Shown: one piece after another, positions 1-9,315 of the stretch
Numbering within the stretch: the first letter of the stretch is position 1
How the letters are laid out: the number at the start of each line of letters is the position of its first letter
Assembly: GCF_947568905.1 (NCBI RefSeq)
Contig: NC_079164.1
Span: forward strand, 108,934,001-108,998,000
Direction of reading: 5' to 3'
Source: Ostrea edulis
Lineage: Eukaryota
DNA: 64,000 bases
The notes under the pieces: model-generated
Databases searched by the model: none
What the model saw: the letters and a program-made list of their open reading frames with translations, nothing else
Told to the model about the DNA's origin: nothing
Translations under genes and position numbers: made by a program

Positions 1-60
1 ATCTTGAGCTTTCATTTCATACCATGATCTGCGACCTTGTATCACAGTTATGTCGTTACT

Positions 61-123
61 TTTGGGTGCTAGGTTGTTTTGAGGGCTAGGTTGTTTTTGG
101 GGCTAGGTTGTTTGGGGGCTAGG

Positions 124-155
<32 letters not shown>

Positions 156-190
156 CTAGGTTGTTTTTGAGGCTAAGTTGTTTTGGGGCT
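61..190. repeat. ~17-18-bp tandem repeat (GGGCTAGGTTGTTTTTG)
   Basis: Visible periodicity, interrupted by poly-T and poly-G. Confidence 0.7.
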
Positions 191-1228
191 AGGTTGAGAC
201 CACAATATGGTGAGGAAACATGTAAATACTTATGAAAATAAAAATACGTGTTCACACTATCAAGTCCTTTTTTGAGAATGCATGTATATGAAAGTTCAAA
301 GGGCATATGTAGGTACACGTGTAGGTAGACCGAAAACCCACGTGGAAATACACACCAATATTTTCACACCATTATCTCCCAAGGTTGTACTGTTCAGTTA
401 TAAAATCTTTGGATTTGAAAAGTTCGAATTTTTAGAAAAGCATTGATCGAATGAGCAAATCCTTCAAGTTGACACACATAATGTGAAAAATTATTCAAGA
501 AGAACCAAACTTCATATCTAGAAATAAAAATTTGGATAACAATTATGAGTCAGTAAATCAAAATGATTTTCGCACTAAATCTTTGATTGGCCACAAGCTG
601 TTGTTCACTCTGTGTCGGAAACTTCCGGACGCGACATGCATGTGAAATTCCGAAAAAGGGAGAGTCGGAATTACGATAGATCCTAAATTTGCCGTAGGCC
701 ACAATAAGGTGTTTAAATACATGAAGATTGGTGAAATATCGACGTCGGCGAGTTATCACAATATCTATATGATGCAATTTCAAAGTACTACATTTTGCGA
801 ATTTTCAGTCATTTCGTGGAGAAATTGACCTTTTACTAAATATGTTTGTCTTTTTCGCTTCAATGTACATCAGCACTGTTAGAGCTAGCCTGTCGTCCAT
901 ACGCTCCTTATAAATAAATTTTATCTTGCCGGCAGGAGTTGTGTAATTTGAAACATGTAGACATTCTTCGGCTTTCTGTATAGGTACGTAAGAGTTCCGC
1001 ATTAAAAATAAGATTATACGCTTTACGAATATCAAGATGTCGTATTTGTCAAAGAAGTACAACGCATGTCCAGGGGGGGGGGGGGGGGGGATGTTGCCTG
1101 TCATCACCAAACTGTGATTTTTTTGGTTAACTGTGCATAAACCTACGACCTAACTACATGTATATTACTATAAAAGTGTAGTTAAACAGATGTCTAAATA
1201 GTGAATTTATTATTATGATTATGTGTAG

Positions 1229-1230
<2 letters not shown>

Positions 1231-1270
<40 letters not shown>
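1231..1270. repeat. (GA)n microsatellite; others at ~1659-1692, 2903-2968, 3381-3436, 13250-13283, 52411-52472 (CA/TA) and 59949-59990
   Basis: Direct reading. Confidence 0.95.
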
Positions 1271-1272
<2 letters not shown>

Positions 1273-1594
1273 ATTATTTGATAATTCTTGTATTCTAAAA
1301 AGATTTAAAACTCTGTCGTATAATTACTTAAAAGCGATTATTCGGATCTAATTTGCGAAATGATAGATTAATTAAGAAAATTATAAGACATAATTAGGCT
1401 ATCATAATTTTTTTCTGGTCGACTTTTCGTGAGTAAAACCCATGATCAAAACTATAGTGAACACAAAACATAAAAACTTAATCATTTTGTAATTTGAATG
1501 TTTTACTTGCACGCACCGCTACGTATATATGTATAAGGCTACCCATTTACGGCTTTGTGCTGTAGAAGCCTTCTCTTGGGAGCATCTGCTAGTA

Positions 1595-1654
1595 ATGGAC
1601 ATATATCTCAGAGGTAAGAAAGTATATGTATTCATTAGTAAATCTTAGTATGCT

Positions 1655-1696
<42 letters not shown>

Positions 1697-2898
1697 AGAG
1701 TATCTTGAAATACGAATATCAACTAACATTTACATATCCCATGTTTTTGCCCTTTATATATTGATCTACAAATTGTAATTGGATCCATTTCCTCATCAAT
1801 GTGTTGCAGTTGTAAACAATACGCGGATGAATACCATAAAATGTATATCTGTTTTAACGATTAGGGATTCCGATTGAAGTAATATAAGGGGGGGGGGGAT
1901 CGTTATCCAAAACGAACGCGCTTCATGAAGAATATTCAAAAATGGAAATCGGCCGACCCTTGGAATAACATGTACTAGGACAAAATAATGCACAGGTGTT
2001 GTAGCATGAAATTTTTCGAATGGTAATTCGAATTTCCCTTTGGGGAAAACGCACCCATCTTCAACAGGAGCGAAAGAAAAGTCCCTATTTCGCATTTCTC
2101 CTACCAGTCAATATAACGTTCCTTCTATGGTAAAAAAAAAAAAAAAAAAACTACTGAGGGTTCTACTCCTTCCCTCCTTTCCGGATTTCATCAAGTTTGT
2201 GTTTCTGAAATAGTTTTGGTCTGTCGTGGAATCATTACTAAGTGTATGTTGTCAAACTTTTCTCGAACACCAAGAGATTTGGTGCCGAGCAAAGCGAGGG
2301 ACCAAATCGAGTGGCGAGAGAAAAGTTTAAGAACATACAATATCTGTTTCACACGAGAAATTAACACTCTTTGTGACCCCTATCTAATTTATTATAACCA
2401 TTCAATATCTTTTATCCTTTAATCAAGATCATCCACATTTATCTTGATTGGTGCAATTTTATTTTGGCTGGGTTTGATAAGTTATGCCCTCAAGGGGAGT
2501 TTACCTATATTCAACAGCCAGATGAGGGTGCACAGTGAGTAGTTTTCAAGTGATATTAGTTTGTTTTTTTTTGCACACATCCATATTTCAAAGAGTGTCT
2601 GCCATGTCTTTTCAAATGGATTTAAGTTAAGAATTTACTTAAACTATTATTTTCGACATTTTCGGACATGATAGAAAATACTTCCAAGCGTTGTCTAGAT
2701 ATCATTTCTGAAAATGATATTGAAAACAGACTATTTGGGTGACCAACAAAAACGGATCAGATATCCTGATAGAGTGATATAAAATTGTCCCTGTGTCTTT
2801 CAAATGATAGATTGGTAGATGTATAGCTTTGTGACCGAAGATGGTAAGTACACATCCTATATTATTTTCATAAAGTGTTAGTGATGGGGCATAACATA

Positions 2899-2970
<72 letters not shown>

Positions 2971-3378
2971 AATATATCTTAGATAGAACACGTCTAATCT
3001 CATGATTCTGTTGGTAAACCAAGTCACCCAAATTTTTGTGTTTTTGTTTAGATATTCAATATTCCATACCAATTCTATTAACTGACACACCGAATTCAGA
3101 AAGCGCGGTGCCCTTCCTTGATTGTTATTAATTATAAATACAATGGCATGGTTACCCAACCATGAAGCTTGGACTTGGTGTGTACCATGTTTTAAAAATC
3201 TTTTTGTTCGAGGTGTGAAATATGTACTAATGATGGACAGCTTGTGTGTTGTTGTGCGTCCCGTCGAGAATTTTCACCCAAAGACGTCACAATCACAGGT
3301 AATTGATGTTTGGACCCATACTTTCTTTGATTCACCCCTCCCCTTTTTGAATCTGCATTTTTTTGTATTTGCATTGGT

Positions 3379-3440
<62 letters not shown>

Positions 3441-5724
3441 GGGGTAAGATCATATCGTCATCGAAAGGGGGCGGGGTCTAGCGCTGCTAATATATCCGCA
3501 GGTCGCGAGTTCAACCCCGGGTTATTGCTTGCGGACTCTATGAGCATGTGACCAGCACGCTAAACCGTTCGACCATCTAGTATATAATCTCACCATGTTG
3601 TCCCACGGTCACCAGGGGCGTAGCTAGCACTGATTTGATGTGTAGACAATTCAGGTTTCACGGGGCGAGGTGGTGGAGCTGGTCCCTTCTTACCACTGAG
3701 GTTGGGAATGGCGAGAGATTTTAGAAAAATAAGAAATATTTTACTCTAATTTGCTCATCAAAATAATTAAGATAGGTATGAACTAAATATCGTGAATTTC
3801 CAGTTTCAATGGGGGAATTTATTTGTATGTGTTTCACAAATCAGGGAAGCATATTTGAACTAAAATGCAGACCAGCTGGACTCGACGCATTAATTGGCAT
3901 CTCGTCCAATCTAATTAAAATTAGATGTTGGATCCACTCGCATACTCGCTACACAAACGTTTGTGTAGCGAGTATGCAAGCGGATCTAACATCTAATTTC
4001 AATTAGATTGCATCTCGTCACAATGGTTTATATACAGGTATTAGTAGTGTGATAGTAAATAGAAAATGAAATGACAGGAGTTTGTAAATATCAAATGATA
4101 TAACTTACATCTATACTTTGAGACACACGCCCACTAACACCCCCTCCTCCTTTAGAATGATTCTGTTACTTTATGTCGATATCTAGATCGGAGAGATCGG
4201 TCGAGGTCTGGATGTTTGTCGAATGAATTATGGTATTTGGTGTTTATATCCTCCTCAATTTCATTTTTGAATAATTATTGTTATTCAATATTACATTTTT
4301 AATGATTAAATATCAATGATAGATAAAAATAGTTCAAATGATGAATTTTCATTTTCCTATTTTTTTCCTGTTAATTCTGAAACAAATACTTTTTCACATT
4401 TTAAGTTAGGTGATGTTCATACACACACGTATTATAACCTTGATGGAAATTCAAAGCTACAGTTTGTATTTCCAGCTAGATGGTTTCGTTGGGGGAATTT
4501 ACTTGAATGGCCATATATCTAGATCATAGAGATCGGTTTGTCGAATGAATTACATGTATAGTATTTAGTGTTTATACATGTATATCCTCCTTAATTTCAA
4601 TTTTTAGTAATTATTGTTATTCAATATTGCTCTTTTATAATTAAATATCAATAATAGACAGACAAGTAAAAATGGTTCAAGTGATGAATTTTCGCTGTCC
4701 TATTTTCTGTTTATTCTGAACCAAATACTTTTTCACATTTTTTTTAAAAGAAAAAATCTGTACTATAACCTTGATGGAAATTCAGATCTGTGACATTGGT
4801 GCTATTTTGATGTCAAAAATTGAACTTTTAATATTATCCGGAATCTTTCATTGAGACTCCACTGCGATCTGGATAGGGATTTTTGAATAGGCCTACACAT
4901 GACACTGTATATATAGATCTATGTTAACTTATCAATACACGCTGAAATGTTGGTCTTTTGTCAGTACACATGTACCATTTCCCTCCGATTAAAAAAAAAA
5001 TGGGATAAACGTTAGAGAGATATAAAAATTTTATCATGTGCATATTTTTGTACAAATATTTTATCCAAATTATGTGTGGGCACGTGTCTAACGAAGCTAC
5101 GTCCCTGGGCTCACTGAGAAAAGAAATGAAATGCATTTATTTTACGTTTTAAGAGGATCATTCACGATTAACACTGCAATTGATATATATCTTTTTATAA
5201 AGCACATAGATTGCAAATTTTATACAACTCTTAACCAAACAAAACTGTTCAAAGTGAAACAAAAATATGGAATACAAAACGCTGGGAAATATATCCGCGC
5301 AGGATAGGAAAATGGACCCCTTTCATTTTAATATTTCAATACTAGGAACTTTTCATTGTTTTAATTAATTCGTTTTCACTAATCCATCTTAAATCAGCCG
5401 CATGGCCATTTCCCCCCTCCATTTATCTTGGAGTAATCATAAGGCATTTGTGAACAAAACCCTTTTTTCACGCTGGCAATGCTTTCTTGCGTATTTTCAC
5501 AATATTTACAATACATGTCTTTTTTATATTTTCTAGCCGTGATTTTCTGCCTTGTCATAGGCGCAGTGTTTGTATTGACCGAGCAGGCGTACACCCGCCC
5601 CGGACGGTGTGGATGGATTCCCGGTGCCACTCCATGCTATGATACGGGCGATTGGCGGCGGCAGAAAAGTCAATATGCGGCGCAGGCTTTAGACGATCTT
5701 TTCAAAAGAATGGCATACCGATGA
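1595..5724 (+). CDS. Small secreted prepropeptide, 68 aa, 2 coding exons (1595-1613, 5537-5724): MDIYLRAVIFCLVIGAVFVLTEQAYTRPGRCGWIPGATPCYDTGDWRRQKSQYAAQALDDLFKRMAYR
   Basis: ATG GAC ATA TAT CTC AGA G|gtaaga donor (phase 1) joins in frame to ttttctag|CC GTG acceptor at 5537. The join gives a complete hydrophobic signal peptide, a C-x8-C pair, and RR and KR sites. TATA-like tatatatgtataag lies at ~1523-1536 and AATAAA at 5821. Pairing of the two exons is inferred. Confidence 0.7.
3907..4010. mobile_element. 104-bp foldback MITE (Mutator/MULE-like), 9-bp TSD CATCTCGTC
   Basis: Two 52-bp inverted arms CAATCTAATT...CAAAC|GTTTG...AATTAGATTG, with an identical 9-mer at 3898-3906 and 4011-4019. Confidence 0.85.
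4180..4790. repeat. Degenerate direct duplication (~4180-4465 and ~4515-4790) in the peptide gene intron
   Basis: Both copies run ATATCTAGATC...GTCGAATGAATTA...AACCTTGATGGAAATTCA. Confidence 0.65.
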
Positions 5725-5943
5725 TATCAACTTCTTGACTTACAAAAAGAGACACTCTTTGAATGAAAGTTGCGTAGATTATAGAACTTCAGTATAAACT
5801 TATTTAATTGCATCCATAGTAATAAAATATGCTTTCCAACCTGTTCTTCGTTACTTTTTTTCCGTTCTTAGTCTTTTATGGTTTCTATACAAGTTTAATT
5901 ATGTTATCGTCTCTACTTCGGTCATAACATCGCGGCTCTACTC

Positions 5944-6670
5944 GTGTTATCGCATTTCTGCTTGTGTCATCGCATTTCTGCTTGTGTCATCGTGTTTCTG
6001 CTTGTGTCATCGTGTTTCTGCTTGTGTCATCGTGTTTCTGCTTGTGTCATCGCATTTCTGCTTGTGTTATCGCGTTTCTGCTTGCGTTATCGCGTCTCTG
6101 AGTTATTACATCTCTATACTTGTGTTATTGCGTCTCTGCTTGTGTTATCGCGTTTCTGCTTGTGTTATTGTGTTTCTGCTTGTGTTATCGCGTTTCTGCT
6201 TGTGTTTCTGAGTTATTACATCTCTATACTTGTGTTATTGTGTTTCTGCTTGTGTTATCGCGTTTCTACTTGTGTTATTGTGTTTCTGCTTGTGTTATCG
6301 CGTTTCTGCTTGTGTTTCTGCTTGTGTTATCGCGTTTCTGCTTGTGTTTCTGAGTTATTACACCTCTATACCTGTGTTATTGTGTTTCTGAGTTATTACA
6401 TCTCTATACTTGTGTTATTGCGTCTCTGAGTTATTACATCTCTATAATTGTGTTATTGCGTCTCTGAGTTATTACATCTCTATACTTGTGTTATCGCGTC
6501 TCTGAGTTATTACATCTCTATACTTGTGTTATTGTGTTTCTGAGTTATTACATCTCTATAATTGTGTCTCTGAGTTATTACATCTCTATACTTGTGTTAT
6601 TGTGTCTCTGAGTTATTACATCTCTATACTTGTGTTATTGTGTTTCTGCTTGTGTTATCGCGTCTCTACT
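5944..6670. repeat. Composite minisatellite (20-bp TGTGTTATCGCGTTTCTGCT and TGAGTTATTACATCTCTATACT units)
   Basis: Direct reading. Explains the repetitive ORFs at 5944-6849. Confidence 0.9.
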
Positions 6671-7819: not shown

Positions 7820-9315
7820 TCAACAAAGAGACACTTGTTTTAAAACATCACTGCATTTGGCATCTATTTTCATATCAGCGAGTTTGTCTGCACGTGTAGG
7901 TCCAATACTTAAAATCAAGATAGGTTTCTTCATTTCGGAGGCTCGAAATACAAATCTATACCCAGAGTATACCTTTAAAAAAGAAAAACAGGTAAATTCA
8001 CTATCATGTAGTACTGCATACACTATACCTCAAAATTTATCTTATTTCATATATCTGTTTTCTTACAACACTAAAAAGCTTACTGTAAAATGGTATTGTA
8101 TATTTTGCTAGATATCTCAGTATGCCATTTTAGCACTTCTTTCCACCAGTAATTTATGATTAAATGAAAAGTTTATCAATGGTAAAACTTCTTTCTTTAT
8201 GCGTTGTCAGTGGTATATTGCTAAATTACCTCTAATGAAGACCCAACAACAAGAACCTGGTCACACTCTTGTACTTTTTGGAAAACAAAATTAACAGTGG
8301 TCTTTGGAACATTATCTCCAAAAAAGATTATCTCTGGTTTTAAGGGTCCTGAGCATTTAGGGCAAACTGGTGTCTGAAAAACAATGTACAACTCAACCTG
8401 TTCAATGGTGAATCATATTGAAGTCATATTAAGGATTTACTGGCATCAAAACAATACTAGATGTTGTTTTAATTATTCTAATTTAAACAGATGAACAATA
8501 GCAATCAACAAAATACTTTTTTAAAGTCAACATTATCATGTATCTGTAAAACATAATTTCTCAACAAATTCTCTAAGTAAAAAACTAGTATTTAGAATAT
8601 AAAATTGTGTACAGTATATGTAGAAATGATTTACACAAAACCCTTCTATTTCTTCTTGAGATAGTTGTATATCACCATCTGGTGCTAACACATCTGAGAA
8701 ACCTCTCCAAGTTGGATTAAGATTTTCAATCATTGCTTGTAAATCGTGTCTGGTTATTTTGAAATCACATCTCAGACAAGCCACTCGGTGAGTACTGCCA
8801 TGAAGCTCAGTCAGCTTGGTGCTTCCCACCTTTTGATGCAAGGCATCAACATTTTGAGTGACCAACCAGCAAACTTTACCCAAGTCTTCCAAATTCTTTA
8901 AAAATCTGTGGGAATCATTTGGTTGAACAGTGGAAAATGTAGGCCAGCCAATATAATTTCTTGCCCAGTATCTCTGTCGGATTTTTTCACTTTTCACAAA
9001 ATCCTGATATATGACAGGTCTGCTTTTGCTAGTAGCATACAGTCCTACTCCTCGTGATCTGTAATCTGGAATGCCACTTTCTGTTGAAATACCTGCTCCT
9101 GTCAAAACTAAAATGTTTCGTCCTTTGTCAACGAACTCGGAAAAATCTTGGATATCATACTGAGAGACACCTTTGGATTTAGGTACATATGCTTGAGTAA
9201 CAACCGAATATTTCCTGATCACTGGTAACTCGCGCAATCTGGTTGTTACGATTCTTCCCATGTACTGGACTGTGACCATGTTGAACAACTGAACTCTACC
9301 CCCAGCTGATACCAT
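7820..9315 (-). CDS. SIRT4: NAD-dependent protein deacylase sirtuin-4 (mitochondrial), ~325 aa; exons 9315-8635, 8373-8230, 7972-7820
   Basis: Motifs GAGISTESGIPDYRS, RQRYWARNYIGWP, TQNVDALH, ELHG, CxxC...CPKC, LKPEIIFFGDNVP, VVGSSLEVYSGYRF and IGPTRAD. All junctions are GT-AG and phase 0. Exact start Met is uncertain. Confidence 0.95.

What the first reader, a model, noticed from the sequence alone, without database searches (positions are those of the whole stretch)
1595..5724. Unannotated-looking 68-aa prepropeptide with a single-disulfide mature peptide
Seen in sequence: a 19-nt first coding exon (strong GTAAGA donor, TATA-like box ~60 bp upstream) joins in phase across a 3.9-kb intron to exon 2. 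The product is signal peptide + YTRPGRCGWIPGATPCYDTGDW + RR + QKSQYAAQALDDLF + KR + MAYR, with AATAAA at 5821. This is classic prohormone-convertase precursor architecture. The C-x8-C spacing equals that of elevenin (established), but the loop GWIPGATP lacks the elevenin-like residues I recall. I cannot match it to any known molluscan neuropeptide or antimicrobial peptide family. Inference: a novel neuropeptide, hormone or defence peptide.
Basis: partly seen in the sequence, partly recalled or inferred. Interest (0 to 1): 0.75.

Follow-up and report, generated by a model that had tools for sequence, protein, structure and literature searches.

The report
Orphan oyster secreted-peptide gene, splice unproven
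A small, single-copy, transcribed flat-oyster gene appears to encode a secreted hormone-like peptide with one disulfide loop; it belongs to no described peptide family and has no detectable relatives, and its first exon, its processing and its function are all untested.

Summary
Exon 2 (5537-5724) is real. It encodes a hydrophobic leader, a 22-residue C-x8-C peptide, RR, a 14-mer, KR and MAYR, followed by AATAAA at 5821. It is the GC-richest 150 bp of the 64-kb window, and the GC step falls at the proposed acceptor. Contigs from two small RNA libraries of one study cover only 5557-5770 and none of the 4.1 kb upstream, so the exon is transcribed. A third library of that study also holds part of it.

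The 1613^5537 junction was not seen. The 19-nt exon 1 is one of about four strong in-phase candidates, so it is plausible but unproven.

The gene is single-copy. I found no relatives in 5.8 billion clustered proteins, 1.84 billion representatives, Pfam, PDB, the ESM Atlas, JGI metagenomes or neuropeptide papers.

It is not elevenin. Gly16 and Arg15 are absent and the gene structure differs. The canonical elevenin gene lies on another contig. It is not an EP/GGNamide peptide either, because it has no GGN motif and no amidation signal.

Best reading: a lineage-restricted prohormone-like secreted peptide gene. Secretion, cleavage, tissue and function are inferred. Interest is moderate.

The parts
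1524..1538 (+). TATA-like element (TATATATGTATAAGG), about 57-71 bp upstream of ATG 1595. Candidate core promoter of the spliced model.
   Evidence: Read in sequence. Function is inferred. It lies in unique DNA (depth 3-5x in DNA runs).
1595..1613 (+). Candidate coding exon 1 (MDIYLR plus the first base of an Ala codon). Kozak-like context G at -3 and G at +4, followed by GAG|GTAAGA donor at 1614-1619. UNVERIFIED.
   Evidence: The donor matches 7/9 of the consensus. It is one of 4 in-phase candidates with at least 7/9 among 121. No RNA coverage was seen in X1 or X2.
1614..5536 (+). Candidate phase-1 intron of 3.9 kb. Positions 1702-4117 are mostly high-copy repeats and microsatellites. It ends in a strong polypyrimidine tract plus AG (5517-5536).
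   Evidence: Repeat depth is 100-4000x in DNA runs X4 and X7, against 3-5x in unique parts. Microsatellites. RNA runs X1 and X2 give zero coverage here. A +T allele at 5519 in one DNA contig would frameshift an ORF started at 5515 (weak).
5479..5536 (+). In-frame open extension upstream of the acceptor, with ATGs at 5479 and 5515. These are the alternative start codons of an unspliced 81- or 69-aa ORF.
   Evidence: GC here is about 24%, against about 50% just after 5537 (my count from the sequence; windowed profile). ATG 5515 has a weak Kozak context (T at -3, T at +4).
5537..5724 (+). Exon 2 coding part: hydrophobic leader, propeptide and stop (5722-5724).
   Evidence: Translation. GC-richest 150-bp window of the 64 kb, 0.587 at 5536-5685. 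Single copy in the genome. RNA contigs cover 5557-5770 and 5604-5770.
5539..5589 (+). Leader h- and c-region, VIFCLVIGAVFVL-TEQA. The predicted signal-peptide cleavage is after A (TEQA|Y) or after T (VLT|EQ).
   Evidence: Kyte-Doolittle 11-mer means are about 3.0-3.2 across the core and fall to below 0 by YTRP. The cleavage site is inferred, because no SignalP was available.
5590..5655 (+). Predicted peptide 1, YTRPGRCGWIPGATPCYDTGDW (22 aa). Cys codons at 5608-5610 and 5635-5637 give C-x8-C. An internal RPGR is a possible extra cleavage site.
   Evidence: about 2.47 kDa, pI about 6, net charge about 0. The disulfide and the cleavage are inferred.
5656..5661 (+). RR dibasic site
   Evidence: cleavage inferred.
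5662..5703 (+). Predicted peptide 2, QKSQYAAQALDDLF (14 aa, acidic). The N-terminal Gln could cyclise.
   Evidence: inferred.
5704..5721 (+). KR dibasic site (5704-5709) followed by the C-terminal MAYR (5710-5721).
5725..5845 (+). 3' UTR with the AATAAA poly(A) signal at 5821-5826. A 5-bp indel polymorphism sits at about 5769-5775.
   Evidence: The indel is seen in DNA run X7 and as the loose end of the RNA contig in X2. The 3' end itself was not observed.

Best explanation
A real, single-copy, transcribed small gene of the flat oyster. Its last exon (5537-5724 plus about 120 nt of 3' UTR) encodes most of a ~68-aa secreted prepropeptide.

Proposed mechanism:
1. A short 5' exon supplies the ATG and the charged n-region of a signal peptide.
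2. This exon is spliced in phase 1 to exon 2.
3. The leader is removed on entry into the ER, and Cys 5608 and Cys 5635 form a 10-membered-residue disulfide loop.
4. Prohormone-convertase-type cleavage at RR and KR, followed by carboxypeptidase trimming, releases three products. They are a non-amidated, roughly neutral 22-mer (or a 16-mer starting at Cys if RPGR is also cut), an acidic 14-mer, and MAYR.

It works like a single-disulfide neuropeptide or peptide-hormone precursor such as elevenin or EP/GGNamide, but it is a member of neither. On present data it is lineage-restricted.

Shown: the ORF, its composition, its single-copy status, transcription of exon 2, failure of the family motifs, and absence of detectable relatives.
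Inferred: exon 1, secretion, the disulfide, cleavage, and a signalling role.
For: - The ORF and motifs are exactly as read.
- Exon 2 is the GC maximum of the 64-kb window, and the 150-bp peak window starts at the proposed acceptor (profile; the 24% to 50% step is my count). This favours an exon boundary at 5537.
- Three small RNA libraries of one study hold the exon. The contigs of the two I laid lie at 5557-5770 and 5604-5770, and none falls on 1400-5556.
- AATAAA lies about 100 nt after the stop on the + strand.
- The feature combination occurs once in the window and about 0.03 times per shuffled window.
- Under the spliced model the leader h-region is 14 residues, a typical signal-peptide length.
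- Exon 1 has a TATA-like box, a Kozak G at -3 and G at +4, a 7/9 donor, and lies in unique DNA.
- The gene is single copy.
- There is no coding polymorphism in ten population contigs or two further DNA runs, while the flanks vary. This is not significant, and part of the sample was selected for an identical protein.
- The 10 kb upstream holds only a decayed retroelement, so no host gene is nearby to donate exons.
Against: - No read or contig spans the junction.
- In-frame ATGs at 5479 and 5515 allow an unspliced CDS.
- Other in-phase first-exon candidates exist, for example 2522-2534 (MRVH|T) and 2819-2843.
- The RNA evidence comes from one study, consists of contigs only, and gives no strand or tissue information.
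- No homologue was found in any database, so there is no evidence of purifying selection or conservation of the Cys pair or the dibasic sites.
- Position -3 of the favoured signal cleavage site is Glu, which is atypical.
- There is no amidation signal and no peptide evidence.
- Genome-wide, the feature filter would still give some hundreds of chance hits.
Confidence: 0.48

Rival explanations
1. Same gene, but with an unspliced or differently started CDS. Translation begins at ATG 5515 (69 aa) or ATG 5479 (81 aa) inside the reader's 'intron'. The hydrophobic stretch then grows to about 19 residues (FLYFLAVIFCLVIGAVFVL). That could act as a signal anchor, giving a small membrane-tethered microprotein, or it could still be a cleaved signal peptide.
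For: - The frame is open from 5443, with ATGs at 5479 and 5515.
- Gene callers on public contigs call the 81-aa ORF (P0001).
- No junction was observed.
- Exon 1 is not statistically unique.
Against: - GC drops to about 24% in 5479-5536 and steps up at 5537 (my count).
- A strong polypyrimidine-AG acceptor sits at 5517-5536.
- The Kozak context at 5515 is weak, and there is no TATA-like element within about 100 bp upstream.
- No RNA contig covers 5479-5556.
- A +T allele at 5519 would frameshift this ORF (single low-depth contig).
Confidence: 0.2
2. The exon is transcribed, but the ORF is not a functional coding sequence. It would be the terminal exon of a non-coding or very young (de novo) transcript, and its prohormone-like look would be coincidence.
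For: - No relatives were found in 5.8 billion clusters or 1.84 billion representatives.
- Pfam, PDB and the Atlas are blank.
- Open frames of this length occur by chance, and the feature filter was designed after the fact.
- There is no translation evidence.
Against: - The sharp GC island coincides with the ORF.
- The combination of leader, Cys pair and two dibasic sites is rare in shuffles.
- No coding variants were seen while the flanks vary (weak).
Confidence: 0.2
3. A highly divergent paralogue of elevenin, or of EP/GGNamide, that has lost the C-terminal family motif.
For: - The C-x8-C spacing equals that of both families.
- There is a basic residue before Cys1.
- Pro9 and Ala11 of the loop coincide with oyster elevenin, C-ETYPFARR-C.
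- Both are small precursors with a single disulfide-loop peptide bounded by basic cleavage sites.
Against: - The invariant Gly16 and the usual Arg15 are absent, replaced by Asp and Tyr.
- There is no GGN motif and no amidation signal.
- Elevenin genes have two phase-2 introns, one inside the loop, both in the cone snail and at this oyster's own elevenin locus. This gene has none there.
- Two of eight loop identities is within chance.
- phmmer found no link.
Confidence: 0.07
4. Exon 2 is the terminal exon (transmembrane helix plus cytoplasmic tail) of a larger upstream gene whose extracellular-domain exons are in phase 1.
For: A phase-1 acceptor followed by a hydrophobic stretch is typical of TM-encoding last exons (established knowledge). 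An upstream coding exon is required in any case.
Against: - The hydrophobic stretch after the acceptor is only about 14 residues and is followed by Thr-Glu-Gln rather than basic residues.
- There are no convincing coding ORFs on the + strand in 1-5536.
- There is only a decayed retroelement in the 10 kb further upstream.
Confidence: 0.05

Closest known systems
Elevenin (Aplysia L11 peptide family; protostome neuropeptide acting on elevenin GPCRs)
   Same: - One disulfide with eight residues between the cysteines (Cys5/Cys14).
- A small precursor in which basic sites bound a single disulfide-loop peptide.
- Ala11 is present.
- Pro9 is shared with oyster elevenin.
- Not amidated.
   Different: - It lacks the invariant Gly16 and the Arg15 (or Leu/Ile15 in oysters) after Cys14.
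- Aromatic residues at positions 8 and 10 are missing.
- The predicted length is 22 (or 16) residues, not 17-19.
- There is no phase-2 intron inside the loop.
- The genome has its own canonical elevenin gene on contig C6 (..TYPFARRCLGVAA-KR).
Excitatory peptide / GGNG / GGNamide / CCHamide family
   Same: - Lophotrochozoan members have C-x8-C.
- In the Aplysia precursor a dibasic site follows the single predicted peptide.
- There is a Gly-x-Trp-like element in the loop.
- An aromatic residue follows Cys2.
   Different: - There is no GGN (or GGH/GAH) C-terminal motif.
- There is no Gly-basic amidation signal.
- The loop residues (KGPWANHM in C. gigas) are not shared.
Lineage-restricted oyster neuropeptide-like precursors (e.g. 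Cragi-CCCGS, reported only from C. gigas, PMC8398477)
   Same: A small secreted Cys-containing peptide precursor with no relatives outside a narrow lineage and unknown function.
   Different: - No sequence similarity.
- Those precursors were supported by ganglion transcriptomes and often by MS. This one has only low-depth RNA contigs, and the tissue is unknown.

Membership tests
Elevenin | Two conserved Cys at positions 5 and 14 (C-x8-C) | tested here: met
   The peptide reads C-GWIPGATP-C. The definition comes from PMC9963005.
Elevenin | Conserved Gly at position 16 (two residues after Cys14); Arg15 in 93% of members | tested here: not met
   Here Cys14 is followed by Tyr-Asp. The oyster canonical form is C-L/I-G.
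Elevenin | Ala11 (85%), Pro12 (81%), Ala19 (83%) | tested here: inconclusive
   Ala11 is present. Position 12 is Thr, with Pro at 13. Position 19 is Asp.
Elevenin | Mature length of 17-19 residues | tested here: not met
   The predicted length is 22 residues between the signal cleavage site and RR, or 16 if RPGR is cut. These are predictions only.
Elevenin | [quoted passage not shown] | tested here: not met
   The cone-snail structure is cited in PMC9963005. This genome's own elevenin exon is flanked by phase-2 introns, one of them inside the loop. The finding has at most one phase-1 intron, in the leader.
Elevenin | Is the species' elevenin orthologue | tested here: not met
   A canonical elevenin exon was found at G000:C6:64195040, and it matches the second half of Cg-elevenin exactly.
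Elevenin | Activates an elevenin GPCR | not testable with these tools
   This needs a receptor assay.
EP / GGNG / CCHamide | Two Cys with eight residues between them (lophotrochozoan members) | tested here: met
   against PMC12969411 and the C. gigas peptide SKCKGPWANHMCFGGNamide.
EP / GGNG / CCHamide | C-terminal GGNamide (GGH/GAHamide in arthropods) | tested here: not met
   The sequence after Cys2 is YDTGDW-RR.
EP / GGNG / CCHamide | C-terminal amidation signal (Gly before the basic site) | tested here: not met
   Trp precedes RR and Phe precedes KR.
Convertase-processed secreted prepropeptide (generic class) | N-terminal cleavable signal peptide | tested here: inconclusive
   The hydrophobic core has Kyte-Doolittle means of about 3.1, followed by a polar c-region. 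No SignalP was available. The N-terminus depends on the unverified exon 1, and -3 Glu is atypical.
Convertase-processed secreted prepropeptide (generic class) | Dibasic cleavage sites that delimit peptides | tested here: met
   RR is at 5656-5661 and KR at 5704-5709. Cleavage itself was not tested.
Convertase-processed secreted prepropeptide (generic class) | Spliced, polyadenylated mRNA carrying the full ORF | tested here: inconclusive
   Exon 2 is present in RNA-library contigs, but the junction, the strand and the transcript ends were not observed.
Convertase-processed secreted prepropeptide (generic class) | Conservation of the bioactive core in related species | tested here: inconclusive
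   No relative was found. However, no other oyster genome could be searched directly, and a ~20-residue core would be below the detection limit.

The most novel reading that the evidence does not exclude
A new, Ostrea-restricted family of secreted signalling (or defence) peptide. It would be a non-amidated 16-22-residue peptide with a Pro/Gly-rich C-x8-C loop (CGWIPGATPC) and a co-released acidic 14-mer. It would be unrelated by descent to elevenin and EP/GGNamide, and would act on an unknown receptor or target.
Probability: 0.3. Interest if true: 0.6.

Novelty: new variant of a known kind. Interest (0 to 1): 0.4.

Why it matters
If the peptide is made, it adds an undescribed single-disulfide peptide to the bivalve signalling repertoire, in a species of conservation and aquaculture interest. 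It would also be an example of a lineage-restricted peptide-hormone-like gene, which bears on how new neuropeptide genes arise. It gives concrete targets for testing: peptide masses and an in-situ probe. Without proof of the junction, conservation or peptide evidence, it remains a candidate rather than a discovery.

Tried and rejected
- Pfam gave only sub-threshold noise, DUF4630 and CD20 at E about 0.09.
- The word-index protein search returned only the window's own 81-aa ORF, P0001. It sits on 13 Logan contigs; the ten returned are collinear with the genome, so they are DNA rather than cDNA.
- phmmer against 1.84 billion representatives gave two hits below 1e-3. Both (P0002, P0003) are translated tandem repeats and were rejected as spurious.
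- ESM Atlas features scored at most 0.79, against bacterial hypothetical proteins. This is not a lead.
- PDB sequence search found nothing.
- The JGI metagenome scan found nothing.
- An exact look-up of the 5'-truncated product expected from the RNA contig was not on record.
- A literature search for five peptide words found 0 papers.
- Motif searches in the supplements of the C. gigas ganglion and the pan-mollusc neuropeptide papers gave no relevant hit.
- A 21-aa Pinctada elevenin query against the own genome found nothing, because the query is too short. A degenerate DNA pattern then found the elevenin gene.
- A pattern for MCFGGNG hit a chance site, so the canonical EP/GGN gene was not located.
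- A resemblance of GRC..IP...C.D to Bowman-Birk/SFTI-type inhibitor loops came from memory only. The loop length and the P1'/P3' residues differ, so I did not pursue it.
All searches used exon 2 or the contiguous ORF by reference.
Full report
**What is in the sequence.**
- The + strand carries ATG at 1595 and 19 coding bases (MDIYLR plus G), followed by a GAG|GTAAGA donor at 1614.
- A TATA-like TATATATGTATAAGG lies at 1524-1538.
- At 5517-5536 there is a long pyrimidine tract ending in AG.
- From 5537 the frame reads (A)VIFCLVIGAVFVLTEQA-YTRPGRCGWIPGATPCYDTGDW-RR-QKSQYAAQALDDLF-KR-MAYR-stop. The stop is at 5722-5724 and AATAAA at 5821-5826.

- The frame stays open upstream of 5537 and contains in-frame ATGs at 5479 and 5515. 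A contiguous 81- or 69-aa ORF exists without any splicing.
- I enumerated every ATG-to-GT combination in 1-5536 that is stop-free and would join 5537 in phase. There are 121 candidates, and four have a donor match of at least 7/9. These include 2522-2534 (MRVH|T) and 2819-2843, both inside repeats.
It lies in unique DNA, has a TATA-like box at a sensible distance, a Kozak G at -3 and G at +4, and a short basic n-region. It is not statistically singular.

**Is it a gene?**
- Composition. Exon 2 is the GC-richest 150-bp stretch of the whole 64-kb window, at 0.587 for 5536-5685 against a window mean of 0.354. Only 0.02% of 150-bp windows reach 0.58 (profile). By my count from the sequence, GC rises from about 24% in 5479-5536 to about 50% in 5537-5594. 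This favours a true exon boundary at 5537 over an unspliced start.
- Feature filter. A filter written after the fact asks for a hydrophobic leader, a 30-120-aa tail with at least two dibasic sites, and exactly two Cys 3-12 apart. It picks only this ORF among 225 open frames in the window, and 0.03 per block-shuffled window. That would still allow hundreds of chance hits genome-wide.
- Expression.
  - Three small RNA libraries of one study hold words of exon 2.
  - I laid two of them on 1400-5925. Their only contigs lie at 5557-5770 and 5604-5770, and nothing falls on the 4.1 kb upstream.
  - The shared 3' break at 5770 coincides with a 5-bp indel polymorphism that is also seen in a DNA run.
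  - Runs X4 and X7 are collinear with the intron and show repeat pile-ups, so they are DNA.
  - Transcription of exon 2 is therefore supported, but by one study, and from contigs that show no strand, no ends and no junction.
- The spliced junction 1613^5537 was not observed. My single calls to the run-finding and read-laying tools were used.

**Context.**
- The locus is single copy in the 895-Mb assembly.
- The supposed intron is mostly high-copy repeats and microsatellites.
- The 10 kb upstream of the window contains only a decayed reverse-transcriptase-like element. A larger host gene that donates exons is unlikely.
- Ten population DNA contigs and two further DNA runs show variants in the flanks and UTR but none in the 188 coding bases. 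This is not significant, and the ten contigs had been selected for an identical protein.
- One low-depth DNA contig carries an extra T at 5519. That would frameshift an ORF started at 5515 and would be harmless in an intron (weak evidence).

**Relatives.**
- Pfam is blank.
- The word-index search of 5.8 billion clusters returned only the window's own ORF.
- phmmer over 1.84 billion representatives returned itself plus two spurious satellite-repeat translations.
- The ESM Atlas, PDB and JGI metagenomes gave nothing.
- Peptide words occur in no paper of the library, nor in the supplements of the main oyster and mollusc neuropeptidome papers.
- Limits of these searches:
  - No other oyster genome could be searched directly.
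  - A precursor in which only about 20 residues are conserved would fall below the detection threshold.
  - "No relatives" therefore means "none detectable here".
Every search used exon 2 or the contiguous ORF by reference.

**Comparison with known families: elevenin.**
- Elevenins are 17-19 residues long, with Cys5, Cys14 and Gly16 conserved, Arg15 in 93%, Ala11 in 85% and Pro12 in 81% (PMC9963005).
- Aligned on the cysteines, the oyster peptide reads C5-G-W-I-P9-G-A11-T-P-C14-Y15-D16. The spacing and Ala11 fit. Gly16 and Arg15 do not.
- The cone-snail elevenin gene has three exons with two phase-2 introns.
- With a degenerate pattern I found this genome's own elevenin exon on contig C6. It reads ..TYPFARRCLGVAA-KR.. 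and is identical to the second half of Cg-elevenin in PMC4200219. It is flanked by phase-2 introns, one of them inside the loop.
- The finding is therefore neither the elevenin orthologue nor built like an elevenin gene.

**Comparison with known families: EP/GGNamide/CCHamide.**
- Lophotrochozoan EP/GGNamide peptides also have C-x8-C, but they are defined by a C-terminal GGN-amide (PMC12969411). The C. gigas peptide is SKCKGPWANHMCFGGNamide.
- Here the tail is YDTGDW-RR, with no amidation signal.
- The finding resembles both families in layout and belongs to neither.

**Most likely mechanism (inferred).**
1. A short 5' exon provides Met and the n-region. The 14-residue h-region and the TEQA c-region direct ER entry and cleavage.
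2. The two cysteines close a Pro/Gly-rich loop.
3. Convertase cleavage at RR and KR, with carboxypeptidase trimming, yields three products:
   - a near-neutral 22-mer of about 2.47 kDa and pI about 6, or a 16-mer if RPGR is also used;
   - an acidic 14-mer with N-terminal Gln;
   - MAYR.
4. The lack of net positive charge argues against a classical cationic antimicrobial peptide and mildly favours a signalling role.

If translation instead starts at 5515, the hydrophobic segment is about 19 residues, and a membrane-anchored microprotein becomes possible.

**Verdict.**
Exon 2, its motifs and its transcription are confirmed. Exon 1 and the junction are not.
The precursor-like architecture and the absence of any family match hold. 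Conservation, secretion, processing and function are untested.
- Novelty: a new variant of a known kind, namely an orphan prohormone-like precursor.
- Interest is moderate, at 0.4.

Noticed in passing
G000:C6:64195033-64195145 (L013 1494-1606): The canonical flat-oyster elevenin exon, (E)TYPFARRCLGVAA-KR-DVSANMNTENSREQRLFELKNM. It is bounded by two phase-2 introns, one of which splits the disulfide loop, the same layout as reported for a cone-snail elevenin gene. The upstream exon with RRRFC was not within the 1.5 kb fetched.
   Followed up: partly
window 5929-6670: A complex minisatellite (20-, 38-, 110- and 182-bp periods; T-rich, strong AT skew) lies about 100 bp beyond the gene's poly(A) signal. 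It generates long spurious ORFs, for example 5944-6429.
   Followed up: no
window 1702-4117: Blocks of high-copy repeats fill most of the proposed intron, together with (TC)n and (AG)n microsatellites at 1659-1693, 2903-2968 and 3381-3437. DNA-run contig depth here is 100-4000x, against 3-5x in the unique parts.
   Followed up: no
window 8536-9315 (-): A long ORF with a sirtuin-like motif (GAGISTESGIPDYRS...), probably a SIRT4-type exon. It would serve as a synteny anchor for finding the orthologous locus in other oysters.
   Followed up: no
L012 5516-7241 (G000:C1:108929516-108931241): A run of frameshifted + strand ORFs that look by eye like a decayed reverse-transcriptase-type retroelement, upstream of the window. 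Not checked with a family scan.
   Followed up: no
window 5769-5775 and 5519: Two segregating indels. One is a 5-bp deletion in the 3' UTR, seen in a DNA run and at the end of an RNA contig. The other is a +T in the polypyrimidine tract, seen in one low-depth DNA contig.
   Followed up: partly
G000:C9:61992648-61992667 (L014): The only genome match to a back-translated MCFGGNG pattern reads ..LIICTKMCFGGNGSE.. with no C-x8-C loop and no basic site. It is probably chance, so the canonical EP/GGNamide gene of this genome was not located.
   Followed up: partly
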